Below are positions 1,332 to 60,600 of a DNA stretch of 64,000 bases, piece by piece. The stretch is from the IMG/VR virus record IMGVR_UViG_3300020477_001008, positions 1 to 64,000 of that record, one strand, 5' to 3'. Position numbers and translations under genes: made by a program. Numbering within the stretch: position 1 is the stretch's first letter; each line of letters begins with the position of its first letter. The notes below the pieces were generated by a model. It saw only the letters and a program-made list of their open reading frames with translations. It was not told the origin of the DNA and made no database searches.

Positions 1332-1541
1332 ATGAGAAAAAATTATTATGGCAGGCGTAGATGGAATAGCAATACTAGAAATAATAAAAACCACTCAGTA
1401 ACTACGAACAGTAATAGTAAATCTGCGTTTGCGAAATACAAAGAATTATTAGATAGAGCCTCAAAGGCAAACGATCCTATCGAAAAGATAAACCTACAGC
1501 AATCTGCTGAACATTGGCTAAAGGTTAGCAAGGAGGCCTAG
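1332..1541 (+). CDS. DUF4167-like small protein (alphaproteobacterial family)
   Basis: R/N-rich N-terminus followed by KYxxLxxxA...D..E...Q.AEHW helix pattern. Confidence 0.65.
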   Translation: MRKNYYGRRRWNSNTRNNKNHSVTTNSNSKSAFAKYKELLDRASKANDPIEKINLQQSAEHWLKVSKEA

Positions 1542-2764
1542 TGAAACCTTATTGCATAGCACCATTTGTACATTTATATCAACATAGTCAAAGTCTAGAT
1601 GATAGAGTATGTTGCATTAGTAAAATAAACAAAGCTGATGATAATAGAGATAATGGTGTTGATAATAACTTACAAAGCAAATGGGAAAATGAATATTATC
1701 AAGACATTAGAAAAAGAATGTTAGAACCAGGTTCAGATTTACCTGAATGTGCAGAATGTATTAGGTTAGAAAAACAAGGACAAACTAGCGATAGATTAAA
1801 TTTTGAAAGTCGTTTTAAAAATCAATATATAGAATTTAATACTATAACTGGTAACCAATATAACCATCCATTAGATTATGATTTACGTCCAGGAAACTTA
1901 TGTAATTTAGGTTGTAGAATGTGTAGTCCAATGAGTAGTACACAATTAAGTAAAGAATATAAAAAACATAAAGATGATTTTAATGATCTTGTTCCTGAAA
2001 CTTTTTTTACAATGGAAGATGGTTGTGATTGGGACTATAAAGAAAACCTAGATTGGATTAAAGAAAATTTGTTATCAGGTAAAACAAATAGAATTAAATT
2101 CCTTGGCGGTGAACCTACAATAATGCCAGGTGTATTAGAATTACTTGACTTTATGATTGATAATAGTTTAACACGAACATCATTATCTTTTACTACAAAT
2201 TGTACAAATGAAAACAGACATTTTGTTAGTAAAGTATCAAGGTTTACTGATGTATATTTTCATTTTTCAATAGATGGTATTGGTAGAACATTAGAATACA
2301 TTAGACATCCTGCTAAATGGAACAAAATAAATGAAAATATTAGAAAATTATCTTCTAATAAGAGTTGGATAGCACCAATGTGTAATACAACTATTCAAGC
2401 ATATAATATTCATCATTTAAAAGATTATGTTTATTGGTTAAAAGCATTAAACAAAATCAGACACGTAGAACTCAATACAGTAATAATAGATTATCCAAGT
2501 CATATGAGTTATAAAGTACTTCCAGTAGAATATAGAAATTGCTATATTGTTGATTTAATTAATGATCCTATAATGCAATGGGACGTAATAAAACAATCTA
2601 ATTTAAGAGCAAACCTTAAAACTATATTAGAAGATAAAACTGTTGAAGGTACTGATAAGTTTATAGAGCATACTAAAGCATTTGATAAAGTTAGGAATCA
2701 AAATATAAAAAATTATATTCCACAACTAGCTAGTTATTTTGGTCTTTCAAATAGGTATCAGTAA
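1541..2764 (+). CDS. Radical SAM protein with N-terminal SPASM/Twitch-like Cys cluster
   Basis: CNLGCRMC (CxxxCxxC), GGEP, N-terminal CxxP...CC...CxxC. Confidence 0.9.
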   Translation: MKPYCIAPFVHLYQHSQSLDDRVCCISKINKADDNRDNGVDNNLQSKWENEYYQDIRKRMLEPGSDLPECAECIRLEKQGQTSDRLNFESRFKNQYIEFNTITGNQYNHPLDYDLRPGNLCNLGCRMCSPMSSTQLSKEYKKHKDDFNDLVPETFFTMEDGCDWDYKENLDWIKENLLSGKTNRIKFLGGEPTIMPGVLELLDFMIDNSLTRTSLSFTTNCTNENRHFVSKVSRFTDVYFHFSIDGIGRTLEYIRHPAKWNKINENIRKLSSNKSWIAPMCNTTIQAYNIHHLKDYVYWLKALNKIRHVELNTVIIDYPSHMSYKVLPVEYRNCYIVDLINDPIMQWDVIKQSNLRANLKTILEDKTVEGTDKFIEHTKAFDKVRNQNIKNYIPQLASYFGLSNRYQ

Positions 2765-8703: not shown

Positions 8704-9023
8704 ATCTTTGTTTAAGCTATTTTACATCCTATTTCCAGCAATTTCCATAGTAATGATCTTTATTTTCCTATATTTCTATGCTGATGTTATGGCTTTGTAC
8801 TTTAATGATCTTTTTGCTAATTCTAGCAATAATGAGGTATGTATGGTAAGTAATCTTATATGCTAAACAAGAAAATGATAACAATGATCTTTGCATTAAC
8901 ATTGATAATGGGTTGCGTAAAGAACAATATTCCAGAACAATTTCAAGATGATAAAAACCCTAAACCAGTTATGTACGAAAGAACACAAATTTAGGTCGTA
9001 ATTAACCCTATTTTATCATATAC

Positions 9024-9031
9024 TATAAATA
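9024..9031 (+). promoter_or_regulatory. T4-type late promoter
   Basis: Perfect TATAAATA 5 nt before ATG 9037. Confidence 0.65.
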
Positions 9032-9036
9032 ATAAT

Positions 9037-9180
9037 ATGCAACAGGAAGAAAACTTAATCGAATGTGTATGTAATTGCGGTTGCGAACATCATTGCGAAG
9101 AACCTTGTACAGAGTGTTTGAAATGCGATGATTGTGATTGTCAATGTGGATGCCAATGTGGCCCAGAGGAAGACGAATAG
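9037..9180 (+). CDS. Metallothionein-like Cys-rich peptide (47 aa, 13 Cys)
   Basis: MQQEENLIECVCNCGCEHHCEEPCTECLKCDDCDCQCGCQCGPEEDE; missed by the ORF track. Confidence 0.7.
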   Translation: MQQEENLIECVCNCGCEHHCEEPCTECLKCDDCDCQCGCQCGPEEDE

Positions 9181-9222
9181 TCAATTAATGCACAATAATC
9201 AAACTAAATTAATCGGGAAAAT

Positions 9223-10645: not shown

Positions 10646-10716
10646 ACAAGTGGGGGCGATTGCTGTAATATTCTGTAACAAAACCATTAAATAACTTTAC
10701 CAAAGAGGTAAAGCAT

Positions 10717-10812
10717 ATGGAATTGTTTAAAGGACTAGTAGCATTTTTTATATTAGCAATAGTGATCGCCCTGCTATTGGGTTGGTATCATAGTACACTG
10801 ATTTGGATGTAA
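10717..10812 (+). CDS. Membrane microprotein (31 aa, MELFKGLVAFFILAIVIALLLGWYHSTLIWM)
   Basis: SD GAGG; hand translation. Confidence 0.5.
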   Translation: MELFKGLVAFFILAIVIALLLGWYHSTLIWM

Positions 10813-10820
10813 ATGTAAAA

Positions 10821-10868
10821 CGTTCATCTGGTATAACAGACGGAAGTAAGCACTAGCTGAAGGAACGC
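10821..10868 (+). ncRNA. Glutamine riboswitch (glnA / Downstream-peptide class)
   Basis: P1 CGTTC/GAACG, P2 TCTG/CAGA, junction CGGAAGTA, P3 AGC/GCT, GAA E-loop; 25 nt upstream of an ORF. Confidence 0.85.
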
Positions 10869-10893
10869 ACTTAACTGTAAAAAGGAGAGTGTT

Positions 10894-11067
10894 ATGAGAG
10901 ACACAAAAGGACTAGAAGCTTACACTGATAAGATCAATAAAGAAAAGAAGGCTAAGGCACTTAATAGAACACTACGTAAGAGTGTTGAAACGGGTGCAAA
11001 TGGCACACAGAACTATGTGGTCAAGAGTGGTAAGAACAAGGGTAAGATAGCTTCTAAAGGACAGTAG
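10894..11067 (+). CDS. Small basic protein under the riboswitch (57 aa, MRDTKGLEAYTDKINKEKKAKALNRTLRKSVETGANGTQNYVVKSGKNKGKIASKGQ)
   Basis: SD AAGGAG; hand translation. Confidence 0.75.
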   Translation: MRDTKGLEAYTDKINKEKKAKALNRTLRKSVETGANGTQNYVVKSGKNKGKIASKGQ

Positions 11068-11563
11068 AACTGAACATAAACAGGCTGGTTAACACACTGA
11101 AATAATGGGTGGTCAAAAGGTTAAGGTACATCTCTCTTCACCCAGAAAAAAGGTCATAAAAGTATATTCTAAGATCATAAAACCTACCGTAAGATATCTA
11201 CAGACCCAAAAAGACCATTTTTCCCACCTTTCCCATCATACCCCAAGGTTCTGATATTGCCCCGCCTTTCAGGCTATGAGCCCATAACTGATAGGGGCCA
11301 AATATTCCCACCTTTCTCTATAATGATCTATATTGGTCAGAGAGCCGATCAGCACTACGTTGCTTTCAGCACTCGTGCTGTCTAGCTTGATGCCTGACCG
11401 TAATATGCTTCCTATGTTGGTTGACTCCGGGTACTCTACAATACCGTCAACCACAACATATAGTCACAGCAGTATCAGAGAGAAAACATTTTTTGAACAC
11501 ATTTCAAACACATTTGATCTAATGGTTACTAGATATAGTGCCGTTGCAGAATGAACACACCCC

Positions 11564-12922: not shown

Positions 12923-12942
12923 AATAACAAAAAGGAGCAGTT

Positions 12943-13344
12943 ATGATATTATATACAAAACAATTTAGTAATGCAGTTAGACAAGTTATAAAGAAGCATA
13001 GAGCAAAAGTGCATACGAGATACACATTTGGCACGAGTGGGAGTTGCAGTATGTTTACTAGCGAAGGCAAAAGAAAGATTAGCTTTAACTGTATAGGAAC
13101 TAGAAAACAATTTAACTTAATAAGAAAAGATTTAGTTAAGTTGTTTGCAGGAACTTGGCAACAAAACTTTATGAAGTACAAATGGAACACGGACGGTTGG
13201 CACGATAAAAGAATGTTTAGGATAGAGGGAACTTGTTTGTTTGAGGACAAAACAAAGGAAGAGTTTGCAAAAATAATGAAACAAAGAACACACAACATAT
13301 TGTGGGGCAAGTTGGCAGGTGATACTACAGCTTGTGGAAATTAG
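12943..13344 (+). CDS. Basic, proline-free immediate-early protein
   Basis: SD AAGGAG; no Pro; Ser coded only by AGY. Confidence 0.8.
   Translation: MILYTKQFSNAVRQVIKKHRAKVHTRYTFGTSGSCSMFTSEGKRKISFNCIGTRKQFNLIRKDLVKLFAGTWQQNFMKYKWNTDGWHDKRMFRIEGTCLFEDKTKEEFAKIMKQRTHNILWGKLAGDTTACGN
13292..13335. promoter_or_regulatory. Tandem NrdR-box-like pair (32-bp spacing)
   Basis: acACAACATATTGTgg (13292) and ACTACAGCTTGT (13324), upstream of the -35 at 13349. Confidence 0.6.
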
Positions 13345-15893: not shown

Positions 15894-16122
15894 TGTTTAC
15901 AACTTATATCTTTTTAGTGAAGTTAAGTTACTTAGGTCCTGTAGCTTTAATAATATAGAGCTACAGTACTACACGTACAAACAGTATAGCTATCAGATAG
16001 TATCTATAAGCTTAGAAACAACTGTTTGTACACAGTACAATTGTAACAGTATTGCTGAATGCATAATTGTACACAGTATAGTTGTAGGTCGTGGTTGACA
16101 GAATTGAAAAGGATGCTATACT

Positions 16123-16278
16123 ATGAGCAACAAAATTATTGGAGATAACGGAGAAATACAAGAAGTACCTTTAATCAAAAAAGGAATAACATTATTTCTT
16201 TGGTATCTCGTAGGTAGATACGGAGGTGTATTTTTAATATATTTCCTACTAGCTATAATAGGAGGCCTTGTGTCCTAG
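16123..16278 (+). CDS. Membrane microprotein, paralog B (51 aa)
   Basis: ...LIKKGITLFLWYLVGRYGGVFLIYFLLAIIGGLVS. Confidence 0.55.
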   Translation: MSNKIIGDNGEIQEVPLIKKGITLFLWYLVGRYGGVFLIYFLLAIIGGLVS

Positions 16279-16573
16279 TAGCTATTACAGAATTCGTATC
16301 AGACGAAGTCTATATCGGTTTTGATGGAACTTCGTAGTCTTTGTTGTGATACAGAATGTAGTGGGGTTCTTCCCGGTGCGGGTGTTATTACCACTTAAAA
16401 TCCAAATAACAACGATGCGAGTCATTTCAGGGATAGAGACTCTTGCTAAATGAAATCCTTAGGGGTTTAGATTCATCACTAAACCCCACTAAACACTCCA
16501 TAAAATATAGAAAAAGTTGGTTGACAATTACCCGAAATATGCTATATTAGTTTATATAACAGAGGAGTTGAAA

Positions 16574-17131
16574 ATGCCAAATTGGTGCAATAACAATATA
16601 ACAATAAGAGCCCCTAAAAAGAAACTAGATAAGATAGTTAAAGCGGCTAAAAACGGCGAGTTGCTAAATCATTTTTTACCAATGCCTAAAGTATTAGACG
16701 GCACAACAGCCGATGGTTCTAAAGACAAAGCAATGATAAAGAAGACAGGCTACTCAGACTGGTATAGTTGGAGAGTTGATAATTGGGGAACTAAATGGGA
16801 CATAGATATCTATGAAGGTTCTATTAGTAGAGTAGATGACGAAACGGTGCAGTTTGGTTTTGACTCTGCTTGGGCTCCACCCATTGATGCCTACAAGGCA
16901 GTTCAAGATAAACATCAAGACATTTCAATCACGGCTTACTATTACGAACCAGGAATGGACTTTGCTGGAGAGTATGCAGACGGTGTGATAAGTGAAGTTA
17001 ATGTGTCAGATGAAAAGGATTCTTACTTTGAAGATACCGCACTAGGTAAAGAGTTAGATGCTTACTACGGTATATTAGAATCTAGAGCTGAATGGGAAGC
17101 ACAAAGAAATGCGGAGGTTCATAGTGCCTGA
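16574..17131 (+). CDS. DUF1281/YubB-like ferredoxin-fold protein
   Basis: MPNWCNN, WYSWRVDNWGTKWD, FDSAWAPP, YYEPG; SD GAGGAG. Confidence 0.8.
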   Translation: MPNWCNNNITIRAPKKKLDKIVKAAKNGELLNHFLPMPKVLDGTTADGSKDKAMIKKTGYSDWYSWRVDNWGTKWDIDIYEGSISRVDDETVQFGFDSAWAPPIDAYKAVQDKHQDISITAYYYEPGMDFAGEYADGVISEVNVSDEKDSYFEDTALGKELDAYYGILESRAEWEAQRNAEVHSA

Positions 17132-22985: not shown

Positions 22986-23053
22986 AATAGGGGATTGACA
23001 AAATGGGTAAATGTGTTAATATTAATAATATGCAAACAACAACAGAGGAGAAA

Positions 23054-23563
23054 ATGAATATAAAAGACTATATTTCAATTTCGATTATTGCTTTGGCTTT
23101 TATGCTTATCACTGGGATAGCAAAAGCTGAAGAGTTCAAAACAATATCAGGTTCTGTTGTAGGCGTTGAGGCTATATACGAAACCAAAAACATCCACGAG
23201 CCGCACGAACATTGTACGATACAGGAAGTTCCTATATACGGACAAGACCAAGGTGCGAATATCGTAGGTGCTATTATCGGTGGCTACATAGGTAGCAAGA
23301 TCGGTGGTGGTAAAGGTAATGATATAGCAATAGGTACAGGTGCAGTTATTGGTTCACAAATAGGCAACAAAAAGATAGTTGGCTACAAACAGGTTAGAAC
23401 TTGTGAAACAACCTACACTACCAGCTTACAAAAGGTTTTGAACTATTACATAATATCGTGGAAATCAAACGATGGTATGTTTAGCGGTAAAGCGAAAAGC
23501 ACAAAGCATTGGACTACTGGAGATCACATCAAAGTTAGACTGATAGCTCAACCAGTATTATAG
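23054..23563 (+). CDS. Glycine-zipper 2TM (YcfJ-like) exported protein
   Basis: GAIIGGYIGSKIGGGKG..AIGTGAVIGSQIG; SD GAGGAG. Confidence 0.85.
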   Translation: MNIKDYISISIIALAFMLITGIAKAEEFKTISGSVVGVEAIYETKNIHEPHEHCTIQEVPIYGQDQGANIVGAIIGGYIGSKIGGGKGNDIAIGTGAVIGSQIGNKKIVGYKQVRTCETTYTTSLQKVLNYYIISWKSNDGMFSGKAKSTKHWTTGDHIKVRLIAQPVL

Positions 23564-23584
23564 AACAACCATAACTTGCAACCA

Positions 23585-23613
23585 AGGGCGGGCCTTAAAA
23601 TCCGCCCTTTTTT
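23585..23613 (+). terminator. Rho-independent terminator
   Basis: AAGGGCGG/CCGCCCTT followed by T-run. Confidence 0.8.
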
Positions 23614-23652
23614 AATGGTTGACGGATAGCCAATTTCTGCTATTATAACACT

Positions 23653-23943
23653 ATGAACAGAGGAGCAATTATGCAAAAAGAAATGTTAAAAGGCCAAGGT
23701 GCTAATCCACTACCATTTGATTGTGTAGTATTGGATAGACCTGAAACGATCAAGAACCCATATAGCGGCGAGTCAGTAGAACTACAACCAGATGCAGTAG
23801 CAGTATATGATTGTATCAAAGGTGCTGAACTATTAGCACAAGGTATAGACGATGGCGGACATCCGTTATGGTGCAAGGTTAGAGAAGGCCTAGATTGGTT
23901 TAGACAATACTATGCCAAAGAGTATATGGTATTGTTAGATTGA
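23653..23943 (+). CDS. Hypothetical early protein (start may be 23671)
   Basis: Own promoter; SD GAGGAG. Confidence 0.7.
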   Translation: MNRGAIMQKEMLKGQGANPLPFDCVVLDRPETIKNPYSGESVELQPDAVAVYDCIKGAELLAQGIDDGGHPLWCKVREGLDWFRQYYAKEYMVLLD

Positions 23944-24056
23944 TTAAAAAGATCATTAAACTGGTAGCCAGTTACTATGCAGGATACATAGGTGGCTGGT
24001 TGCTAGTGTTTACCCTACTAGCGATTGCAGGTGCAATAATCTGTATCACTTGCTAG
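23940..24056 (+). CDS. Membrane microprotein, paralog C (MIKKIIKLVASYYAGYIGGWLLVFTLLAIAGAIICITC)
   Basis: TTGA overlap; aligns with paralog A. Confidence 0.6.
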   Translation: MIKKIIKLVASYYAGYIGGWLLVFTLLAIAGAIICITC

Positions 24057-24129
24057 ACTTTTCAAAATAAAAAAAAGAAAAAAATATTTTTCGACCTCGA
24101 CCGTGTATATGCGTCTGGGGTCGGAAACC

Positions 24130-24507
24130 TGAGAATGGGGCTAACGATTGCTAATAAAAAAAGTGGGCTATTATATAGGCGGCGAGATAAAAAGGGCTAT
24201 ATGCAATAGAGGTAAAAGCGAATGCTTTTTAAACTAAAGCACTTGCTTTGGTTTAGACTAGGAAAACAAATGTGGTTGAGGAAACTTGGTTGCTAAAAAA
24301 ATTACGCAGTAAAATTTTATGGGCTAGTGTATAGGCGACGGACTTATATGCATAGCTGATATGGTTAGGTATGCAAAACTAACATAACGGACTTATATGC
24401 AGTTAAAACGTACTTTAATACATTAGAAGCACTTTGATACTACTGAATATGGTTATGACGCTTAAACAGAAGGATATGCACGTTTAAAGGCGGTATTTAC
24501 AACGTAC
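24130..24507 (+). other. Second TC/CC-free tract (apparently non-coding)
   Basis: All Cs (about 48 by hand count) preceded by a purine; repeats (CGGACT)TATATGCA. Confidence 0.85.
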
Positions 24508-24946
24508 CTACCATTAGATCCTGTGGATAGTAAAAAGAACCCTAGAGCATAAGAATACTGTGGATCTCTCGGGCTAGTCAACACTTGAGCGAAGCGAATG
24601 CTTATAAGGGTTATTCAATATAACCACTGTGTCTACTGTATACCACTAGTTGTGAAAAGTTCAGCCCACCCAATTCCAAGGATCACTATAACGTTCCAAT
24701 TCACTTTTATATGGCTTTGCACTCAAACGTAGTACTATTACAAAACCAATAATAAGGATATAAAGCGTCATATAAAGTATATATGATTAACCAGGGTTAG
24801 AACACCTTTAGCTACTGTCAGAACGGTGGATTGTTCCTAGAGCTGAAAGCGAAAGGCTGACCGTACTATTAAGTGGTAGTTAACTAGCTTGAAAAATCGT
24901 TCGTACACATAAAAATTAATACTAATACATCTCTATTAAAATATAA

Positions 24947-25115
24947 CACATACACATATTAGTAAAAATATATCGCGGCATACACATACAGCAAATAATA
25001 AAAAACACATACGCCAAAATTTTTAAACGCATACACACCTCTAAAATAAAAAATCGCATACAAACCTATGTAAAAATACACATACACATACATAAAAAAA
25101 TAGGACGCATACACA
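24947..25115 (+). repeat. Iteron-like (C/G)CATAC repeats separated by A-tracts
   Basis: CATAC at 24949, 24979/85, 25008, 25030, 25057, 25081/87, 25108. Confidence 0.75.
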
Positions 25116-25166
25116 ATTGGCTGTATAATAGCTTGACTTTTAAGCAATATATGTTATATTACTACT

Positions 25167-25406
25167 ATGGGAATTAACTTTGATCTTCCAGAAGAGCAAC
25201 CAATTGAAACAGTATGGATTACTTGTACAGATAAGAACAAGACTATGGAAGCCAATGTAGTTTCTAAAAGACAGCACGAAATTGTTATGGTTACTAAAGA
25301 AGGTAATATTAGATTAAGTTTTAAAAAAGCAAACAGCTTTGGTAAAATCAAAGAAGGAGTTTGGACATCTAATATGGCAGGATATGAATTTGTATATACA
25401 GAATAA
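25167..25406 (+). CDS. Hypothetical protein, probably leaderless
   Basis: TTGACT-N16-TATATT promoter 25133-25160; ATG 6 nt after the -10. Confidence 0.7.
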   Translation: MGINFDLPEEQPIETVWITCTDKNKTMEANVVSKRQHEIVMVTKEGNIRLSFKKANSFGKIKEGVWTSNMAGYEFVYTE

Positions 25407-25886
25407 ATGGCAACAGAAAAAACTAAAAAACTACTGGACAAGCTCAACGATATTACGAGCACTCATAAAGATCTTAACGTACCCAAACACATACCTACTA
25501 GCAATATTATGTGGGTATCAGTTCTAGATATGTACGATTTTCCTAAACACTATGACAAAGTCAAAAAGCACAAAGAAGTAGATGAGGATGGTGTAGAGGA
25601 TTCTTGGTTTTACTATGATAGAATATATGGAGCAAGTCATACGCAAAGATTGATACAAGCAGATGGTTCAGAATATCAAGGCAAAATTTACGATAGACGT
25701 AAAGTTATAAAAAGAGAAGATGGTACTAAATTTTATACTAGATGTCATCAGACAGCAGATGGAAGATGGTTTGATGGATCTGGAATGCCTATGACACCAC
25801 CCACAGAGATAGACAATGAACAAGATGAAAAACAAATACCTGAAGAAGCCCAGTCCGAAGAGAAGGAAACTGGCTCGCAAGAATAA
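25407..25886 (+). CDS. Hypothetical protein
   Basis: Directly abuts upstream stop. Confidence 0.7.
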   Translation: MATEKTKKLLDKLNDITSTHKDLNVPKHIPTSNIMWVSVLDMYDFPKHYDKVKKHKEVDEDGVEDSWFYYDRIYGASHTQRLIQADGSEYQGKIYDRRKVIKREDGTKFYTRCHQTADGRWFDGSGMPMTPPTEIDNEQDEKQIPEEAQSEEKETGSQE

Positions 25887-26094
25887 GTTCTGGCTAAAGC
25901 TTAAAGGAACTTATCAAGAAGATACTACTATGTTAGATCACGACGAACTAGCAAAAGATGTAGAAAGATTGATTGCGGCTGTACAGCAAGATATGATGTG
26001 GGACGACAAAGATGTAAAAACCTGGGATATGATACAACAAGGAATTGTAGATTGGTCAGGAGAAGTAGCTAAAAAATATAGGAAGAAAAAATGA
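25816..26094 (+). CDS. Hypothetical protein (true start may be 25930)
   Basis: ORF track; overlap makes the start uncertain. Confidence 0.5.
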   Translation: MNKMKNKYLKKPSPKRRKLARKNKFWLKLKGTYQEDTTMLDHDELAKDVERLIAAVQQDMMWDDKDVKTWDMIQQGIVDWSGEVAKKYRKKK

Positions 26095-28734: not shown

Positions 28735-28845
28735 TTGTACACCTTTTTTATTATTATATTATTATTTATTTTATTAAGATGTGTACTATCACACCGGTTG
28801 GATTGTTAAGATTGTAATGTTTTTAAAGTTTAAAAAATAGAAGAA

Positions 28846-28935
28846 TTATTTCCTCTTCCATCTTTTACTTCTAGCTCTTCTTTTTTTACTGCCTCTTTTA
28901 CGTCTGCCCTTGTGGGTCTTATCCTGCCTAGCCAT
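28846..28935 (-). CDS. Very basic 29-aa peptide (MARQDKTHKGRRKRGSKKRRARSKRWKRK)
   Basis: Hand translation; SD AAAGG. Confidence 0.5.
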   Translation of the reverse strand: MARQDKTHKGRRKRGSKKRRARSKRWKRK

Positions 28936-29041
28936 AAAGCCTTTCATTACTTCAATGAACTGCTATTTGCTTACATTAATGTGATACAACCGTAAATGAA
29001 AATTGACGTATAGACAATAAAAAGTGCCCACATCGTCTTAC

Positions 29042-29194
29042 TCATTCAACATCCTTTTGATGTGCTTTACCTGATTTTCTACCACGCATATAATATTTTG
29101 ATGGTTCATAATCCCATCTCATACCGTGATGTCCACGTATATCAGCATACCACATTCTAAGTCTAACTATCATCTTTCTAATTTGTCTTGCCAT
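29042..29194 (-). CDS. Small basic protein (50 aa, MARQIRKMIVRLRMWYADIRGHHGMRWDYEPSKYY...)
   Basis: Hand translation; downstream of late promoter TATAAATA 29329-29336 (-) and a long hairpin leader. Confidence 0.65.
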   Translation of the reverse strand: MARQIRKMIVRLRMWYADIRGHHGMRWDYEPSKYYMRGRKSGKAHQKDVE

Positions 29195-29367
29195 TGGTGC
29201 TCAGTCTTTCGTTTTAACAAAGTTAACAAAATTTCAAAGTAGTCTTCTACAATATTTCTGTTAACGTTTTATCAAAACGACTGTGCCATTAGCCGAAATA
29301 ATAGGGTGTTCTACTTGAAGTTCATACCTATTTATAATTCAAGTTAAAATTTAACTTCAAACGACAA

Positions 29368-29472
29368 TTATTTGTAAATGAAAGGATCTCGCTTTTTGAG
29401 TTCTTTAATTTTTTTCTTGTAAGCGAAATGCATTTTGATCTCAATCCAGATGTTTTTGATCCACTTAATCAT
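29368..29472 (-). CDS. Small protein (34 aa, ...KELKKRDPFIYK)
   Basis: SD AGGAG; hand translation. Confidence 0.6.
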   Translation of the reverse strand: MIKWIKNIWIEIKMHFAYKKKIKELKKRDPFIYK

Positions 29473-29479
29473 ATTGCTC

Positions 29480-30661
29480 CTATCTGATTTTAATGATATT
29501 CATTAGCTCTGATAACTCAGGAAACGTTTTATCAAATGACTCTACTCTTACTAAATCCATTCTGTATATGTGCCTCTTAAACTCACCTATTTTATTACTA
29601 CTATCGCTGTTTTCCATAAATTGAATTACTTGGTTGAATCCTTTATAATTATAGTCTAAAAGCCTATCTTTTACAACCTCTTTTAAGAAGCTTGGTAATG
29701 TAGAGATGTTATAATGCTTGGGTTCGTGTAATGTATTTAGGTATACTTTCATACCAAAATTATCAGTCCAGTCTATGAATTCAGGCAAGTAAAAAGCATT
29801 AAAAATATTAACAGTATGACATATAGATAAATCTAGCTTATTTGATTCATATGTTTGCCACACTTCTAAATTCTTCAGTACTTGCTCCCATTTAGCTGGG
29901 TGTCTTTGGTATTCAAATTGTTTACCTATACCATCGATACTAAAATGCACATCAACATATTTGAAATGCGGAAATATATTATCAAGAGCATCTAATGGCA
30001 ATTGTGTTCCATTTGTGTTATAGTGTAAGCTGATTTTATGTGCGTGTCCTTGTTTTATAATCTTATGTAAAAGATCCAAATGTTCTTTTATCATAAACGG
30101 TTCACCACCTGTAAAATCCAAATGCTCTAGTACAGGAATTAGTGATTCAACATTTTTCCAAAACACTTCTGATTTTTCTGGCCAATCAAGTCTTTCATAA
30201 AACTTAATATCTTTATCAATTATATCATATTTTCTTTGTTCTGAAATCCATTTAGATGAGTATTGTGGAGAACAAATTCTGCATTTAAGATTACATATAT
30301 TTCCAAGTTTTAAATCCAAATATCTAGGAGCAGATTCTTCCCATATGATTTTATCATTAATTAAATGCTTGTATTTTGCATTATCTCTTACTCTTTTAGA
30401 TGCTTTACCCGACATTTCTTCCATCCAACATCTATGGCATCCACGTGGTTGTGTGCCAGATAAAAACCTTTTACGTATAGTAGCTAGTTCTTCACTATTC
30501 CATATTTCTTGGAATTCTTCACGTTGGATTTTATATTCTTGACCATTTTCCTTTTTTAGTGTATCTTTATACATACAGCACGGTTTTACTGTGCCGTTAG
30601 GTTGGACTTCTAAACCAGTCCAAGGAAGAATACAAAAATTTTGAGGTAATTTATTATCCAT
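29480..30661 (-). CDS. Radical SAM/SPASM-Twitch protein
   Basis: CNLKCRIC, GGEP, FCILPW..PCC..CHRC. Confidence 0.9.
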   Translation of the reverse strand: MDNKLPQNFCILPWTGLEVQPNGTVKPCCMYKDTLKKENGQEYKIQREEFQEIWNSEELATIRKRFLSGTQPRGCHRCWMEEMSGKASKRVRDNAKYKHLINDKIIWEESAPRYLDLKLGNICNLKCRICSPQYSSKWISEQRKYDIIDKDIKFYERLDWPEKSEVFWKNVESLIPVLEHLDFTGGEPFMIKEHLDLLHKIIKQGHAHKISLHYNTNGTQLPLDALDNIFPHFKYVDVHFSIDGIGKQFEYQRHPAKWEQVLKNLEVWQTYESNKLDLSICHTVNIFNAFYLPEFIDWTDNFGMKVYLNTLHEPKHYNISTLPSFLKEVVKDRLLDYNYKGFNQVIQFMENSDSSNKIGEFKRHIYRMDLVRVESFDKTFPELSELMNIIKIR

Positions 30662-31848: not shown

Positions 31849-33072
31849 CTATGATTTAGCTATTTTTTCAAGATCTAGCAATTCTGGAAATATATCACGC
31901 CAATTTTCATTTCTTATATTATCTAAACGATTTGTGATTTCATACCAGTCTTTTATTAAGTGAGAGTAGTCAGCTTCATACAAATAACTTATTAGCGATT
32001 CATATCTTGTATGATTAGCATCTGTATTTTCTTTCATCCACGTTTGAGCATTAGTCCATTTCTCTGCAAGTTTATCTTTCATATCTTTTGGTAGTATTTG
32101 TATTCTCAAATGCTCAGGAGTTTGCAAAGGATTTAATAAACTATGTGGACCAACCCATTCCTTTTTAATCCAATCAATATGAAAATCTGAAACGTGAAAA
32201 CTATTAAACACGTCAACACACGACGCAACAAAAAAGAAAGCCCTAGGACATTTTTCAAAAACATTTTTTCTATTTTCTTCAACTTGCTCCCAGCTTTGCC
32301 CAGCACGAAGATATTCACCTCGCTTATGTGTTGCATCTAAACTAGCACCAATTTCTACATATTCAAACTTGTCCCATTCTTTGAATACGTCCATTCCTTT
32401 ATAAATTACTTGGCTAAAGTTTGTATTGTACTTTAGTCTTACGTGAAACATTTTCTTTTCTACTAATTTTTTTAATATTCTATAATGCTCTTCCATTATT
32501 AATGGTTCACCACCGGCAAAATATACTTCTTCTAAACCATCTACATATGGCTCAACTACTTCCCAAAATCTTTTTTCGTCTTTGTATGGTCTAATAACTT
32601 TAGAGTGATCTGGTTTACTGAATAATTTAGTTTGGTCTTCATACCAGCTTGATGATAAATCTGGACCACAAGTTCTACATTTAAAGTTACATAAGTTACT
32701 AAATCTAAAATCAATGTAAGGTAAATTAACTTTGTCAACAGTACCATCTTCTTTAGTTGATTCTACAACATCCCAATGATGATTTAATTTTTCATTAGAC
32801 CAAGTTCTAGTTGTATTAATACTATGTCTTTCTTGTTCGTAACAACGTGTACAGATCTTATTAGCTTTTCCATTTAGTAAGTCTTTACGTAATTGTTTTT
32901 GTTGCGGAGAATTCCAAGCTTGTTCTAATGTTATTTCTTTTAAGTTACCCATTATATCGTTACTATCACTCATACAACAAGTCAATACTCTACCATCTGG
33001 CCACGTGTGTAAATGTGTCCACGGTATCATACAAAAAGTTTTTGATTTAAGTAACTTATCTTTATCTAGCAT
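31849..33072 (-). CDS. Radical SAM/SPASM-Twitch protein
   Basis: CNFKCRTC, GGEP, FCMIPW..CC..CTRC. Confidence 0.9.
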   Translation of the reverse strand: MLDKDKLLKSKTFCMIPWTHLHTWPDGRVLTCCMSDSNDIMGNLKEITLEQAWNSPQQKQLRKDLLNGKANKICTRCYEQERHSINTTRTWSNEKLNHHWDVVESTKEDGTVDKVNLPYIDFRFSNLCNFKCRTCGPDLSSSWYEDQTKLFSKPDHSKVIRPYKDEKRFWEVVEPYVDGLEEVYFAGGEPLIMEEHYRILKKLVEKKMFHVRLKYNTNFSQVIYKGMDVFKEWDKFEYVEIGASLDATHKRGEYLRAGQSWEQVEENRKNVFEKCPRAFFFVASCVDVFNSFHVSDFHIDWIKKEWVGPHSLLNPLQTPEHLRIQILPKDMKDKLAEKWTNAQTWMKENTDANHTRYESLISYLYEADYSHLIKDWYEITNRLDNIRNENWRDIFPELLDLEKIAKS

Positions 33073-34072
33073 TGATTTCGCTTTTCCAACTTGGAATAAG
33101 CAGATTTTCAAACACACTTCTGTTATGAGAAAGTTTTGCTTTTATATCATCTTGTTGATATAATTCTGTCCATTCCTCAGGTGTTTTATGTACAAGAGTT
33201 TCTATCTCGTTCCACATAGCACTATATCTTTCATTGTAAGGTAAACTATCAAATGCTTCGTGGTTATATAATTCTGTGTAAGGTTCAAAGCCATTATCTA
33301 TTAAGAACTTCATTGTATCCTTACAACCGTGAACGATAAAAATTTTATTGTACAAAATTGGTTTCCAAGTTTTTTCTGTTATAAACAAACTAGTATCACT
33401 AACAATACTTTCATTTACTATTTCAAATCCCGCATAGTGATAATTTGGAGGTAATATTTCTTGATTTTGTCCTTCGTCAATTTCTTTACCTGTAAAATCT
33501 AATTTAAGATCATCTCCTTGAAATTTTGGATTAGTAAAATAATGATCAGGCACATTATTACCATATCTATTAATCCAAGATATCTCGCCAAATCCATCTA
33601 ATCCATTATCAAACAAATCAGTGACTAATTTTGCTCTATGTGTTTTTGCCGCTCCATTTAAACAAATAAATCTTCTAGTTTTTCTTTCATATGCTTTGGG
33701 TTGTTTAATACTTTTATTTTGTTTGTTTATTATTGTTCTGGATAGTAATTCAAAAGGTGCTGACACTATGTTTACAGGAAAATCTTTACGTTCAGTTCCT
33801 GCAAACCATTTATCTACATTTTCTTTTAGATTAACATCAGCCATTACTAAACTAGCATTATCTTCAGGCCAACCTTCTAAAGCTTCACGTACATACGGTA
33901 AAAAATTTTCTTTTGTTTGGAAATGTATTTCACCTTCCCACACTCTTTTAATTACAATATGATGTGTTTCTTTTTTATCTTGATTATTACGAATCCAATA
34001 ATTTAGGGCATTAAGTTGTCCTAAAATATCGTGTGTACAATCTAAATCAACTATGTGAAGTTCTTTATTCAT
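33062..34072 (-). CDS. Glycosyltransferase-like protein (E..F.TEK..KP family)
   Basis: FICLNG...HR, NES..FITEKTWKPI, GF. Confidence 0.6.
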   Translation of the reverse strand: MNKELHIVDLDCTHDILGQLNALNYWIRNNQDKKETHHIVIKRVWEGEIHFQTKENFLPYVREALEGWPEDNASLVMADVNLKENVDKWFAGTERKDFPVNIVSAPFELLSRTIINKQNKSIKQPKAYERKTRRFICLNGAAKTHRAKLVTDLFDNGLDGFGEISWINRYGNNVPDHYFTNPKFQGDDLKLDFTGKEIDEGQNQEILPPNYHYAGFEIVNESIVSDTSLFITEKTWKPILYNKIFIVHGCKDTMKFLIDNGFEPYTELYNHEAFDSLPYNERYSAMWNEIETLVHKTPEEWTELYQQDDIKAKLSHNRSVFENLLIPSWKSEINAR

Positions 34073-46098: not shown

Positions 46099-47484
46099 TC
46101 ATAAGCAACTTTCATAAAATTCTTCCAATTCCGGAAAAACTTTTTTAAATGATTTGTTCCTTCTTTTATCATATTCATTAATATATCTTACAAAATCATT
46201 TCTAGTTATATTTAAGTTAATTTGCTCAGCTTCGTTTGGATCTGCTTCTGCATATGACTTAAAACGCATTAATTTAGCTAGTTCAAAATCAAAAAACCCT
46301 TTATATGGGTTGTTATGTGTTTCAGCATTATTCTCCATAACTGCCACAGCAGGATCTAATAATGATCCATATTTTTTAGGTAATATTGAAGCACTCAAAT
46401 AAGCAGGGTGCCTTAAAATTGCTGTGTCTATTGTTATTGGTACTTTTCTATCATTGCTATAAAATTCTGTTTTTAATGGATGTATTATATCAAGTAACTT
46501 ATGCAACCTTGGCATACTTAATAATCCAGTTGTACACATAATTGTAATTTTTGTTTTTGGTAATTCAGTTAGCACACGACACATATTATCATACCATTGA
46601 TTAAAGTCTAACCCATCTCTAATATACTCTGCTTGTTCGCCAAATGTATCAACTGATGTGTATAGTCTTGTTAAACCAATTTTATTATCTAATGTTATAC
46701 GTTTCATTTTTTCAATGTATTGATCAAACAGTTTATCTGGTACGCAACCATTTGAGTTAATGCTTAATTCTAATTCTGGTCTTGGATTGTTATTAACATA
46801 ATCTAATACTTTAAAAGTATCTTTTGCTAATAGAGGTTCCCCGCCTGTAATTCTAAAAACCTGGAGAGTTTTGTACAGGTCGGGAAACCATTTCCAAAAA
46901 GCGTCAACATAAGGATTATGTTCACGATGCGGAATCGGTAATTTGCCTTGTTGTTTTAGCCAAGACAAGTTATTAAATTTATCGCTTGTAGGATATGCAC
47001 CTTCAGATTGTATTTCTTCCATCCAGGAACTACTGAATGCAGGACTACAATATGCACATTTTAAATTACAAACATTTGAAAAACTAACTTCAACATAAGT
47101 TGGATTAACATTTTCTACGCCAACCATTTTAGCAGTTTCTTCTAAATATGGTTTAGCCCACGGCTCGTGTGATTTAGAACTTCTATCGCTATAATGTTCT
47201 GGACCTAGATCTTCTACGTTCCAACAGTATTGACATTCAGGAGGTCGTACTCCTTTTAACATTAATTCTCTTTGTGATTTTTTATATTCAGTATTGTGTA
47301 AAGCACTAGGATTAGTTTTTAATTCTTCTACAGGAACTTGGTGTGTTCTAGGGTGATGACAACTATGTGTATGACCATATTGTAAATGAATAGTTGACTG
47401 ATACCATTTCGCTAGACAGAATGATGGCGATACAGCATTAAGCTGATCTCTTGTCTGCTTGATTTTAATAACTTCATCTGTCAT
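46099..47484 (-). CDS. Radical SAM/Twitch protein (paralog of 42127)
   Basis: CNLKCAYC, GGEP, FCLAKW..SCHH..CQYCW. Confidence 0.9.
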   Translation of the reverse strand: MTDEVIKIKQTRDQLNAVSPSFCLAKWYQSTIHLQYGHTHSCHHPRTHQVPVEELKTNPSALHNTEYKKSQRELMLKGVRPPECQYCWNVEDLGPEHYSDRSSKSHEPWAKPYLEETAKMVGVENVNPTYVEVSFSNVCNLKCAYCSPAFSSSWMEEIQSEGAYPTSDKFNNLSWLKQQGKLPIPHREHNPYVDAFWKWFPDLYKTLQVFRITGGEPLLAKDTFKVLDYVNNNPRPELELSINSNGCVPDKLFDQYIEKMKRITLDNKIGLTRLYTSVDTFGEQAEYIRDGLDFNQWYDNMCRVLTELPKTKITIMCTTGLLSMPRLHKLLDIIHPLKTEFYSNDRKVPITIDTAILRHPAYLSASILPKKYGSLLDPAVAVMENNAETHNNPYKGFFDFELAKLMRFKSYAEADPNEAEQINLNITRNDFVRYINEYDKRRNKSFKKVFPELEEFYESCL

Positions 47485-57688: not shown

Positions 57689-60600
57689 TTATTCCTCATT
57701 AAAGTACCCAGTTTTATCACCTGATGGTGTAGTATATCCTGGCTGTACGTATGTTGTATTATGCAATTTAAAGTTACTTAGACCACCTTGTCTAATGAAT
57801 ATAGCTTGTTCTGATGGGTCAAGTTCTGCTTTATCCCACTCAACACTATCAAACATAACTGCGTCCCAGTTAGCTTGTATAGTTTTATCAACTAGTTTAG
57901 TACCAGCTGGATCAAAACCAGACCATCTAGCTGAAGTATCAGCATTTGGTATATCGTGCTGTGAACTTGATGAATATATAACTTCATCTGTAGTGTGATT
58001 TGTAATTGGAGTACCTAAAATACCTCTACGTATTTTTTTCAAAGTATTACCACTTACTTCACTAAATTCTATTAATTCGTCTCCAATCCAAACATAACCA
58101 GGATTGGTTGAGCTTACTGATCCTGTAATAATTGCAGGGATTGTTCCAATAGCCGCTGTTGTTGGATTACCACTTGAATCGTAATTTGTATCAGGATCTG
58201 GAACACTAACACTATCAAATAAAACACTAGCATTAGCAACTGTAATTTGATTAACAGTTAAATCAATGTTTGCACTCAAGCTTGTTTCACAAACTTTTGG
58301 TAATCTTTTAAATTGTGCTTTGTTATCATTACCATAAAAAATTCTAAATGCATATTGATCACCATAGCCCATAGTTTCTGTTGTATCCCCATCACTATCT
58401 AAATCTTTTTTATCTGCCGCAGTTTCTTGATAAGTTATAACTGTAATTTTTAAAGTTTCTTTCATTTGCATTAAGAAGTTTTCTTCTGGTCTATCTTCTT
58501 GTAATGGTCTTAAGAAACCTGCACCATCGAATTTAGTTACAACTAAATTCCATTTACCTGCCGCATAGTCAGTTGCAAAATTTGCCGTACTTGTATGATC
58601 TGAAGCCGCAAAATAAATGTATTCGTCAATTAAATCCCATCTAGAAAACTGCATACCAGATTCACCTGCAAGATTTTTATGTTGTACGTTACATCTATAA
58701 ATTTTGCCTTGGTATTCAACAACGTCTTTAACTTTGTATTCTGATACACTACTCCAAGCCGGGAAGTGACTAATATCATCATACTTCACAAAATTATTTG
58801 TTGTAATTTGATCATTATCATCAATAGTTATTTTTGTTGAATAACTTGTAGTTGGTTGCCATAACAATGAAGTTTGGAATAACGTATTAAAGAAATCTTG
58901 TACAGCATCTTCATCCCATTTTAATGAAGTATCAAAATCTGAAATATCAAAACCTAAGCTTTCAATTGCTTCATCGTCTGCATAACTTGTAAGATTAAAA
59001 TCTGTAGCAGTAGCAAAACCATCTGATATCATTGAGTTAAAATCAATATCTCTAAATGGAGATAATTTAACTCTTAGTTTTCTCATAAACTCAGTTATTT
59101 GATCTGTTGAGTTTATATCAAGTGCCGCTAACTCATTTGCAAAATGATATTTTGCAATTCTTTCAATTGCACTATTAGTTGAACCATAAGTTAAGTCACC
59201 TGCTCCACCTGTGCTTTGAATTTCTGTACTTGTTTTCTTTTTCTTTAATTCAACTAATTGAGTTTTATCATCACTAAACACTTGTACAGTTTTTGTTGTA
59301 TACGAACCAGAATTTTCATCCCAGCTAGAATATGTTAATCCATCTGGGTGGTTTTCAGTAACTAATTCAATTTGTTTACTAATTCTATCAAACACTAAAG
59401 TTTCTTTACTTGTTCTAGTTTCAGCAACATTAACATTTGCATTTTCAAGTGGTGTTTGTTTTTTACTAGTATAGTTAATTAATTTTGAGTGATATGGTTT
59501 AGCTTCATTAATATAATCTTTAACGTAACTAAATGTATCAGGTGCGTATGAAACTGATTGTTGTAAAGATAAATCTTTTTGTACAGCGTCAAAATATGTT
59601 GTTTTTATAATCCAATCAATATTGTTTTGTTCTTCAAACACAAAGTTAACTGATGCAAATAATAAATTATTTAGATAAGTTTTTTGTGATCCTAAGAATA
59701 GATATGTGTATAATAAATTCATCCATTCTCTTACACCAGTTGATATATCATCTGTTGTTGTCCAGAACTTATTATTCAATTGTGTTGTAGATGTCTTACT
59801 ACTAATTCTTACAAGCTCAGGATTATCTGCTTTACCTGTAAATGTACTCACAGTAGTTGTAGTACTTGCTATATTTGAATTAGAAGTTTCATTATAACTT
59901 CCTGTTGACGTTGTTGCCATTCCTGCCGTAAAGTCAAGATTTGCAGTAGCAACTGGAGCCTGTCCATTTAATACAACATCTCTATCACCATATACATAAA
60001 TTGCTGACTTACTGTTGTAATCATAATTTACTTTAATTACATCATAATCAGATAATGTAGATAAATCTATATTTGCTTTGTAGTCAACTGTTTTATTAAC
60101 AATTATACTATCATCATATCCATTTACATAATAATCTGATTTGTCATATAATGTTTTATCAGTTAATGTATTTTCCCATTCCGGATAATCTACATCAAGG
60201 TTTGTTACTTTTAATATATTGTTTAACGTATATGCAAATACTCTTCTTGCTTCTTTAATATTTTTAAACCAAGTTTGTCTAGGTCTTACACTATTACCGT
60301 ATTGTGAGTACTTACTTAATATTGACGTATCAGGTACTGCTTTTCCTGATGCATCTTTTCCAGATAATGAATCAGTAAGCTTGTTCCAAATCATTTTATC
60401 AACGACTGTATCAGGATCATTTTCTTTAATCATAATCCATTGTTTGTGTATTGGAACGTCTTTATCAATTTTCTTATAGTTCAATCTAAATACTGAATCG
60501 CTAGTAATATGTTTTGTTGCATTTGAAATAGTTAATGCAGTAGTTGATATTGGTGCATACCAATTAACACCATACGAAGTAGGATTTTTAATTAGTCTAC

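What the first reader, a model, noticed from the sequence alone, without database searches (positions are those of the whole stretch)
24060..25130. 1-kb non-coding element closing the early region: origin or T5-like injection-stop signal
Seen: a hairpin at 24089-24127; a G-rich left arm with TATGC repeats; a central part with three imperfect DnaA-box-like 9-mers (TGTGGATAG 24522, TGTGGATCT 24559, TGTGAAAAG 24651) and AGCGAAGCGA; a C/A-rich right arm with CATAC units every 22-30 bp between A-tracts. TATGC and GCATA face in inverted orientation. Established: iterons, DnaA boxes and AT-rich DNA mark origins, and T5 pauses DNA transfer at a repeat- and palindrome-rich signal. Function here is inference.
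Basis: partly seen in the sequence, partly recalled or inferred. Interest (0 to 1): 0.6.

Follow-up and report, generated by a model that had tools for sequence, protein, structure and literature searches.

The report
Conserved non-coding repeat element, jumbo phage
A 1.1-kb gene-free stretch in an uncultured marine jumbo phage is kept almost as strictly as the neighbouring genes and is packed with one-strand repeats and small hairpins; it most likely acts as a DNA signal such as a replication origin, but this is not proven.

Summary
The ORF-free stretch 24057-25166 is real. The window is the first 64 kb of a 242.6-kb marine jumbo myovirus contig. The same element, in the same orientation and syntenic position, occurs in 13 metagenomic loci from three lineages.

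Its core is 71-89% identical between lineages, against 46-77% at third codon positions of flanking genes. Mismatches show no 3-base periodicity, so it is non-coding and under purifying selection.

All repeats lie on the + strand:
- a duplicated about 155-nt module
- GGGCTA x5, ATATGC x5 and AGCGAA x4
- hairpins with compensatory changes, several fitting the GCGNAGC/GCGNNAGC DNA mini-hairpin consensus
- a G-poor 3' array of 7-8 CATACA units between A-tracts, ending at a sigma70-like promoter

It matches no Rfam family. Its fold is no more stable than shuffles (z -0.6) and covariation is weak. Four metatranscriptome runs with exact contigs on nearby genes have none on it.

The DnaA-like 9-mers are at chance level and not conserved, and GC skew gives no signal.

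Best reading: a cis-acting DNA element, probably an iteron-type origin like T4 oriE (confidence 0.4). A stage-specific + strand RNA or a regulatory/insulator region remains possible. A T5-like injection stop has no specific support.

The parts
23940..24056 (+). Small 38-aa membrane-type ORF (TTG start). It is the left boundary gene, not part of the element.
   Evidence: Aligned and conserved in L003, L027 and L028. tblastn hits in 5 related loci.
24057..24087 (+). A-rich leader (A 66%) between the stop codon and the first hairpin.
   Evidence: An A-rich run followed by TAATTTC-like bases lies at the same place in all lineages.
24088..24127 (+). 5' hairpin H1 (16 pairs, 4-5 G-T/U). It contains the box CGACCGTGTATAT (24098-24110), which is identical in seven of nine lineages and has single changes in L003 and L063. 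It may act as the stop for upstream transcription.
   Evidence: Searches show it is + strand-specific. In L054 the stem CC/GG is swapped to GG/CC, a compensatory change. The stem is not kept in L003, L116 or L115. An alternative pairing of the box with ATATAGGCGGCG has weak covariation.
24118..24430 (+). Left arm: two tandem modules about 155 nt apart. Each carries GGAAACYTG (24123-24131; 24280-24288), an A-run, and TGGGCTA..TATAGGCGRCG (24164-24184; 24320-24340).
   Evidence: Family D5 and alignment A8 (the duplication is also present in the Tara lineage). GGGCTA x5 against 0.10 expected.
24214..24229 (+). Hairpin A: AAAAGC-GAAT-GCTTTT. At the same site the relatives have GCGAAGC, GCGGAGC, GCGTAGC or GCGTTAGC, which fit the DNA mini-hairpin consensus.
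   Evidence: Found by position in all 9 full copies, with A-T to T-A swaps at two stem positions. Consensus GCGNAGC/GCGNNAGC is taken from PMC13037366. z -4 to -5 together with hairpin B.
24230..24255 (+). Hairpin B: TAAACTAAAGC-ACTT-GCTTTGGTTTA, with a conserved T-G wobble.
   Evidence: pair 167-176 is AU in 5 and GC in 3. It is rebuilt with other partners in L003 and Tara40.
24400..24495 (+). Most conserved primary-sequence blocks of the window-like and L003 lineages: CAGTTAAAACGTACTTTAATA (24400-24420) and GAAGGATATGCACGTTTAAAGGCGGTA (24469-24495).
   Evidence: Alignments A1 and A4. Not alignable in the Tara-like clade.
24585..24603 (+). Site B: TTGAGCGAAGCGAATGCTT. It contains GCGAAGC (24589-24595) and a second exact copy of AAGCGAATGCTT.
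   Evidence: Family D14. Tara40 has GCGGAGC at the homologous site.
24604..24780 (+). Variable, indel-rich centre. Relatives carry an extra hairpin module of about 47 nt with AGCGAA in its loop.
   Evidence: Alignment A4. Identity drops to 0.45-0.81 here.
24781..24909 (+). Conserved right core: hairpin CTACTGT-CAGA-ACGGTGG (24812-24829); site C, CCT-[AGAGCTGAAAGCGAA]-AGG (24836-24856); GTACTATTAAGTGGTAGT; and ATCGTTCGTACACA (24896-24909).
   Evidence: Identity 0.85-0.96. The stem CCT/AGG becomes CTGT/ACAG in the Tara-like clade.
24900..24960 (.). Easiest-to-melt 60-bp window of the element, a candidate unwinding site.
   Evidence: Nearest-neighbour stability lies at the 98th percentile of the genome.
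24947..25115 (+). Array of 7 direct units, [C/A][G/A]CATAC[A/G], starting at 24947, 24983, 25006, 25028, 25055, 25079/25085 and 25106. Each is followed by CC and an A-tract. The array is G-poor.
   Evidence: Relatives have 6-8 units, with spacing of 18-31 nt in the window-like clade, 24-45 nt in L003 and 19-95 nt in the Tara-like clade, always on the + strand.
25133..25160 (+). Sigma70-like promoter TTGACT-16-TATATT (with TG) for the 79-aa gene. This is the right boundary.
   Evidence: Conserved in all window-like copies.
25167..25406 (+). 79-aa gene that co-occurs with the element. The product is predicted to be a small beta-barrel and is a possible binding partner (inference).
   Evidence: tblastn hits in 12 of 13 element-bearing loci and 2 of 67 others, both truncated contigs of close relatives. 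Model pLDDT 86. The best PDB match is Z 5.0 to Tudor/SH3-like folds, which is not decisive.

Best explanation
The stretch is a cis-acting DNA element of a clade of uncultured marine jumbo myoviruses. It is most likely a replication origin of the iteron type, comparable to T4 oriE.

Proposed working (inferred):
- A phage or host protein binds the 7-8 same-strand CATACA units and the repeated GGGCTA/ATATGC/GGAAACYTG boxes.
- The A-tract-rich DNA at about 24900-24960 melts.
- The exposed + strand folds into very stable small hairpins (GCGNAGC-type, plus AGCGAA shown in loops) that escape SSB coating and mark where priming starts.
- Hairpin H1 and the promoter at 25133 keep through-transcription out of the element.

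Shown: the element is non-coding, conserved and strand-asymmetric, its hairpins carry compensatory changes, and no abundant RNA comes from it.

Inferred: protein binding, melting, priming, and origin function itself.
For: - Homologous ORF-free element of about 1.0-1.3 kb in 13 loci of three lineages, always on the + strand and upstream of the 79-aa, 159-aa, NAD synthase and glucosaminidase block.
- Core identity 0.71-0.89 against 0.46-0.77 at third codon positions of flanking genes, with no 3-base periodicity.
- All repeat families are direct and on one strand, each in 0 of 2000 shuffles. Unit number and spacing change between lineages while the motif stays the same, as expected for binding sites.
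- The motif density is unique in the 242-kb genome.
- Mini-hairpin consensus at conserved sites A, B and C. Such motifs are described at G4, St-1 and alpha3 priming origins, RSF1010 ssiA and N4 hairpin promoters (PMC13037366).
- T4 oriE has evenly spaced direct repeats, relies on an early promoter and lies near a strand switch (PMC3016281). Here sigma70-type promoters flank the element and the strand switch is 2.5 kb away.
- There is no global RNA fold: z -0.58, SCI 0.1-0.5, weak covariation.
- There is no Rfam match.
- Four metatranscriptome runs have exact contigs on 23047-23615 and 25330-26009, plus a related-strain contig (9 differences) on 23617-23769, but none on 23770-25329.
Against: - No recognisable initiator gene is adjacent. 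Pfam and PHROGs find nothing for the 79-aa and 159-aa proteins.
- DnaA boxes are absent.
- GC skew gives no signal at the element.
- By gene orientation, a divergent point (about 8 kb) would be the expected origin site rather than 24-25 kb.
- Unit spacing is irregular (18-31 nt in the window-like clade, up to 95 nt in Tara-like copies), unlike classical evenly spaced iterons.
- Dense constraint over about 850 nt is more than most origins need.
- H1 and hairpin B use G-T/U pairs and fold better as RNA.
- The RNA evidence comes from assembled contigs of one study at low depth, and the uncovered gap also covers parts of the neighbouring small genes.
- No replication data exist.
Confidence: 0.4

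Rival explanations
1. A large + strand non-coding RNA of about 0.85-1.1 kb. Hairpins would display GCGAA loops, and an unstructured 3' tail of CA-rich repeats (ACAUACA between A-runs) would bind or sponge a protein. The RNA would be made only at a particular stage or at low level.
For: - Every repeat and hairpin is on the + strand, the same sense as the flanking genes.
- G-U pairs are conserved in H1 and hairpin B. The + strand alifold energy is lower than the - strand in both clades: -87.6 against -64.5, and -72.2 against -65.6.
- H1 is far more significant as RNA (z -3.8) than as DNA (z -2.0).
- Stems change by compensation at hairpins A, B and C.
- Constraint is dense along about 850 nt.
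- The co-occurring 79-aa protein is a small beta-barrel, a fold class that often binds nucleic acids.
Against: - No contig from four metatranscriptome runs lies on it, although nearby genes are covered.
- No sigma70 or ATAAATA-type promoter lies at its 5' edge and no terminator at its 3' edge.
- The whole-element fold is no better than shuffles, the windowed SCI is low, and covariation is only marginally above shuffles.
- No Rfam family matches in four lineages.
Confidence: 0.22
2. A regulatory or insulating DNA region between two early transcription units. H1 would stop upstream transcription. The A-tract and CATACA array would be bent DNA and operator sites, for example for the 79-aa protein or a host nucleoid protein, that control the early promoter at 25133 and shield it from read-through.
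For: - A terminator (23584-23609) and a promoter (23619-23646) lie upstream, and a conserved promoter (25133-25160) lies directly after the array.
- The 79-aa gene co-occurs with the element.
- A two-unit copy of the CTAATACACATACA motif sits just upstream of a radical SAM gene at G000 136118-136150. In L003 and L116 a radical SAM gene follows the array.
Against: - The gene after the array differs between lineages: a 79-aa gene, a radical SAM gene, or a 219-aa gene.
- About 850 nt of conserved core lies far from any promoter, which is much more than an operator region needs.
- The motif is not found upstream of the other radical SAM genes.
Confidence: 0.2
3. A T5-like injection-stop signal or another DNA-transit signal, such as a packaging signal or terminal-repeat boundary. 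DNA entry or cutting would pause at the repeat- and hairpin-rich DNA.
For: T5 Repeat Region 3 is also an untranslated region of about 1.2 kb that is more conserved than its neighbouring ORFs, with many direct repeats (9 copies of DRD) and palindromes (bioRxiv 10.1101/866236). Three short contigs of close relatives end at the element's 5' edge.
Against: - No paired DnaA boxes.
- No long inverted repeats; arms are at most 16 nt.
- Long contigs of 25-80 kb span the element, and the identical 80-kb contig reaches about 27 kb further left, so the element is not shown to be near an end.
- Contig ends inside the element are scattered rather than at one point.
- The large terminase is T4/PA5oct-like.
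Confidence: 0.07
4. Functionless spacer or decayed gene remnants.
For: It contains no ORF and has no known family match.
Against: It is much more conserved than synonymous sites, and the architecture is kept in three lineages despite indels.
Confidence: 0.02

Closest known systems
Bacteriophage T4 oriE (iteron-bearing origin)
   Same: A cluster of short direct repeats in a T4-related myovirus, kept in syntenic places in relatives, associated with early-type promoters and lying near a switch of gene orientation (PMC3016281).
   Different: T4 iterons are 12 nt long and evenly spaced, and their role is itself unproven. Here the core unit is 8-10 nt with uneven spacing. The element adds an 850-nt conserved core with hairpins. 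PHROGs found no family, RepEA/RepEB included, for the neighbouring 79-aa and 159-aa proteins.
T5 injection-stop region (Repeat Region 3 of the left terminal repeat)
   Same: A 1.1-1.2 kb untranslated stretch, more conserved than nearby ORFs, dense in direct repeats and small palindromes.
   Different: No paired DnaA boxes, no 131-bp inverted repeats, no demonstrated terminal repeat, and no A1/A2/dmp context was identified.
DNA mini-hairpins at priming or initiation sites (G4, St-1 and alpha3 complementary-strand origins, RSF1010 ssiA, N4 virion-RNAP promoters)
   Same: GCGAAGC, GCGGAGC, GCGTAGC and GCGTTAGC lie at conserved + strand positions inside covarying stems. These match the motifs listed in PMC13037366.
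   Different: Those systems are ssDNA phages, plasmids or an N4-type virion RNA polymerase. No N4-like polymerase was found here, since the 4061-aa protein is a structural protein. In the window itself hairpin A has the loop GAAT, outside the strict consensus.
Plasmid and lambdoid iteron origins (R6K gamma, lambda ori)
   Same: Direct repeats next to A/T-rich, easily melted DNA.
   Different: Those have an adjacent or overlapping initiator gene and repeats phased at about 22 bp. Neither is seen here.
Large phage-borne structured RNAs (GOLLD, ROOL, HEARO)
   Same: Size class, phage location, and no coding capacity.
   Different: No covariance-model match, no excess folding energy, weak covariation, and no transcripts seen.

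Membership tests
Iteron-type replication origin | Array of at least 4 direct repeats in one orientation | tested here: met
   7 units in the window and 6-8 in relatives, all on the + strand. Spacing is uneven, however.
Iteron-type replication origin | Adjacent A/T-rich, easily melted DNA | tested here: met
   The 60-bp window at 24900 lies at the 98th percentile of instability. The array is 73% A+T.
Iteron-type replication origin | Initiator (Rep-like) gene next to or overlapping the repeats | tested here: not met
   No Pfam or PHROG family for the 79-aa and 159-aa products. The 79-aa fold is an unassigned small barrel.
Iteron-type replication origin | DnaA boxes (where the origin depends on the host) | tested here: not met
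   Chance-level counts, with no conserved box.
Iteron-type replication origin | Compositional skew switch at the site | tested here: not met
   Cumulative GC skew turns at about 28-30 kb and 97.7 kb, together with gene orientation.
Iteron-type replication origin | Replication starts there | not testable with these tools
   Needs depth profiles of infected cells or replication assays.
T5-type injection-stop signal | Lies in a long terminal repeat about 8% from the genome end | tested here: inconclusive
   The contig is partial (55%). An identical 80-kb contig extends about 27 kb further left. No ends are known.
T5-type injection-stop signal | Eight DnaA boxes arranged in pairs | tested here: not met
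T5-type injection-stop signal | Large inverted repeats (IRC/IRD, 131 bp) | tested here: not met
   The longest inverted arms are 16 nt at 81% identity.
T5-type injection-stop signal | Two-step DNA entry | not testable with these tools
   Needs infection experiments.
Structured non-coding RNA (any Rfam family) | Covariance-model match | tested here: not met
   Nothing at the gathering score, and only one spurious hit at E up to 10.
Structured non-coding RNA (new family) | Conserved secondary structure with covariation | tested here: inconclusive
   Three to four local hairpins covary. Overall, 10 cells changed on both sides against 5.4 in shuffles (4 of 500 reach this), and the covariation score was reached by 54 of 500 shuffles. 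SCI is 0.1-0.5.
Structured non-coding RNA (new family) | Is transcribed | tested here: not met
   No contig in four metatranscriptome runs. These are contig-level data from one study at low depth.
DNA mini-hairpin initiation signal | GCGNAGC or GCGNNAGC motif on the folding strand | tested here: met
   24589-24595 in the window. There are 1-3 per copy at three conserved sites in relatives, nearly all on the + strand.
DNA mini-hairpin initiation signal | Recognised by a primase or polymerase | not testable with these tools
   Biochemical assay needed.

The most novel reading that the evidence does not exclude
The element encodes a new class of large phage non-coding RNA. This would be a + strand RNA of about 1 kb in which covarying stems display GCGAA loops, and a 3' tail of 7-8 CA-rich repeats recruits or titrates a host or phage RNA-binding protein, possibly the co-occurring 79-aa beta-barrel protein. 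It would be expressed only in a short window of infection.
Probability: 0.2. Interest if true: 0.8.

Novelty: new variant of a known kind. Interest (0 to 1): 0.55.

Why it matters
Replication origins and other cis-acting signals of jumbo phages are almost unknown, and uncultured marine phages are usually annotated by proteins only. This element is a sharply bounded, strongly conserved non-coding feature with a clear internal grammar: a duplicated module, loop-displayed GCGAA, mini-hairpins, and a CATACA array. It also has a co-occurring small protein. That gives a concrete handle for finding where and how such genomes start replication, or for discovering a new RNA. It also provides a sequence marker for this phage clade in metagenomes.

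Tried and rejected
- Protein coding: no ORF in any lineage and no 3-base periodicity of mismatches.
- Known RNA families: none.
- tRNA or tmRNA in the window: none.
- Similarity to catalogued phages: none by blastn.
- Presence in bacterial genomes: the 25 hits to a 19-position box pattern (one N, one Y) are of the order I estimate for chance (about 35), and none extends by nhmmer.
- Second genomic copy: the match at G000 85896-85990 lies in frame inside an SbcC-like coiled-coil gene and is low-complexity coincidence.
- The array as tandem late promoters: the phage's intergenic signal is ATAAATA, which is absent from the array.
- CATACA as a general radical SAM operator: not seen upstream of the other such genes.
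- N4-type hairpin promoters: no virion RNA polymerase was found.
- Terminal-repeat boundary: contig ends are scattered and long contigs span the element.
- Fold of the 79-aa protein: confident model, but only weak Tudor/SH3-like matches (Z up to 5.0) and unnamed viral clusters.
- More viral relatives: scans with two flanking proteins and three DNA boxes returned only one other IMG/VR contig.

Full report
**Context.** The window is bases 1-64000 of a 242,646-bp IMG/VR virus record rated 55% complete. GC is about 32%. The record encodes a tail sheath, a baseplate wedge and a T4-type large terminase whose nearest catalogued relatives are PA5oct-like jumbo phages at 54% identity. Intergenic DNA is enriched for ATAAATA (the T4-type late promoter word) and for GGTTGAC (a sigma70 -35 word). 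The finding lies inside a block of small + strand genes (8-27.7 kb) that carry sigma70-like promoters.

**The observation.**
- The ORF-free stretch is 24057-25166. It is bounded by a conserved 38-aa membrane ORF (23940-24056) and by the promoter TTGACT-16-TATATT (25133-25160) of a 79-aa gene.
- The hairpin, the TATGC repeats, AGCGAAGCGA, the CATAC/A-tract array and the G-rich left versus A/C-rich right composition are all present and far above chance.
- The DnaA-like 9-mers are not supported. There are 4 matches with up to 2 mismatches against 4.6 expected, and none is kept in relatives.

**Relatives.**
- The flanking 159-aa protein led to one IMG/VR contig (L003). Its ORF-free region aligns to the element at 69-77% identity.
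- Homologues of the upstream 96-aa protein led to Tara Oceans contigs. These carry a much more diverged 1163-nt copy with the same order of boxes and a longer CATACA array.
- A profile scan of metagenome contigs gave 80 loci. nhmmer found the element in 13 of them, always in the same orientation: a window-like clade, the L003 type and a Tara-like clade.
- More distant relatives that keep the 159-aa gene have no such gap within the fetched DNA.

**Constraint.** Core identity to the window is 0.89, 0.87, 0.78 and 0.71 for L050, L067, L054 and L003. Third codon positions of the flanking genes are only 0.46-0.77 identical. Mismatches are spread evenly over the three phases. The element is therefore non-coding and under purifying selection about as strong as at first codon positions.

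**Anatomy.**
- After an A-rich leader comes hairpin H1, holding the near-invariant box CGACCGTGTATAT.
- Two modules about 155 nt apart follow, each with GGAAACYTG, an A-run and TGGGCTA..TATAGGCG. The duplication is shared with the Tara lineage.
- Hairpins A and B come next. Their stems change by compensation.
- Long conserved blocks follow.
- Site B carries GCGAAGC.
- An indel-rich centre follows. Relatives insert another hairpin there with AGCGAA in its loop.
- A conserved right core holds a further loop-displayed GAGC..AGCGAA (site C).
- The element ends with 7 CATACA units, each followed by CC and an A-tract.
- Almost every repeat copy is on the + strand: in the window CATACA 8/0, GGGCTA 5/0, ATATGC 5/0, AGCGAA 4/0 (+/- counts); the window-like and L003 copies have at most one - strand CATACA, and the Tara-like copies have 1-3.
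- Unit number and spacing vary between lineages while the motifs stay the same.
- The motif density is unique in the genome.

**RNA or DNA?**

For a folding + strand:
- G-T/U pairs are conserved.
- The + strand alifold energies are lower than the - strand in both clades.
- H1 is significant only on the + strand.

Against a classical structured RNA:
- The whole-element fold has z -0.58.
- The windowed structure-conservation index is 0.1-0.5 with z near 0 outside the hairpins.
- Covariation on the 5' 265 columns is only marginally above shuffles.
- No Rfam family matches in four lineages.
- In four marine metatranscriptome runs of one study, contigs identical to the window cover 23047-23615 and 25330-26009, a related-strain contig (9 differences) covers 23617-23769, and none covers 23770-25329. 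One short low-depth piece of a related strain lies near 24600.

This is contig-level, low-depth evidence. The gap also includes parts of the small neighbouring genes. It therefore excludes an abundant stable RNA, not all transcription.

**Link to known DNA signals.** Hairpin A reads GCGAAGC, GCGGAGC, GCGTAGC or GCGTTAGC in six of nine copies. Site B reads GCGAAGC or GCGGAGC in the window-like, L003 and Tara40 copies. These are the 'mini-hairpin DNA' sequences reported at the G4, St-1 and alpha3 priming origins, RSF1010 ssiA and N4 hairpin promoters (PMC13037366). T4 oriE combines direct repeats, an early promoter and closeness to a strand switch (PMC3016281). T5 Repeat Region 3 is a similarly sized, conserved, repeat-rich untranslated region, but it is defined by paired DnaA boxes, long inverted repeats and its place in the terminal repeat. 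None of these is found here.

**Verdict.** The element is real, conserved and non-coding. The best-supported reading is a cis-acting DNA element, most likely an origin with iteron-like repeats, a meltable A/T segment and + strand initiation hairpins (0.4). The rivals are:
- a stage-specific + strand RNA (0.22)
- a regulatory or insulating region tied to the 79-aa gene (0.2)
- a T5-like entry or packaging signal (0.07)
- junk (0.02)

The 79-aa small beta-barrel protein co-occurs with the element (12 of 13 loci against 2 of 67) and is the obvious first candidate for a binding partner. Its fold gives no function.

The read-laying run used 5001 letters.

Noticed in passing
window 10819-10871 (+): Glutamine riboswitch (RF01739, 61 bits) inside an ORF-free gap at 10646-11268.
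   Followed up: no
G000 172221-172515 (L134:2221-2515, +): Phage-borne permuted tmRNA of the alphaproteobacterial type (RF01849, 153 bits). It hints at an alphaproteobacterial, possibly SAR11-like low-GC, host.
   Followed up: no
G000 142165-142243 (L132:10165-10243, +): AdoCbl-II (cobalamin) riboswitch, 85 bits.
   Followed up: no
L129:11697-11770; L134:4269-4355, 12935-13007, 13015-13087: Four tRNA genes elsewhere in the genome. There are none in the window.
   Followed up: no
window 1541-2764, 29480-30661, 31849-33117, 46099-47484; G000 136166-137290; L003:3890-5158: Unusually many radical SAM/SPASM genes. In L003 and L116 one sits directly after the element's array. A two-unit CTAATACACATACA motif lies upstream of the one next to the terminase gene (G000 136118-136150).
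   Followed up: partly
window 57689-64000, continuing to G000 69874 (-): A 4061-aa virion structural protein (phrog_10938) with a CBM_5_12 module, followed by a baseplate wedge gene.
   Followed up: partly
G000 102921-103467 (-); window 8751-9222, 15894-16516, 28735-29479: Other ORF-free gaps of 470-745 nt. The one at about 103 kb starts with a GGTTGAC promoter word and has repeated GGCAAACATAG units. No Rfam hit in the gaps scanned.
   Followed up: no
L040:15943-16583 and 16677-16997 (Tara-lineage relative): Relatives carry ribosomal protein L11 and L33 genes and a plastocyanin-like copper protein gene downstream of the syntenic block.
   Followed up: no
window 23584-23646 (+): A strong intrinsic terminator (9-bp stem, T-run) is followed directly by a sigma70-like promoter. 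This is a terminator-promoter cassette between small early genes. The gene before it (23003-23563, glycine-zipper protein) has the highest RNA contig depth, 94.
   Followed up: partly
window 85896-85990 equivalent (G000; L002:1480-1590): A CATACA/A-rich stretch resembling the array lies in frame inside the SbcC-like (gp46-type) gene and encodes an H/T/K-rich coiled-coil segment.
   Followed up: yes
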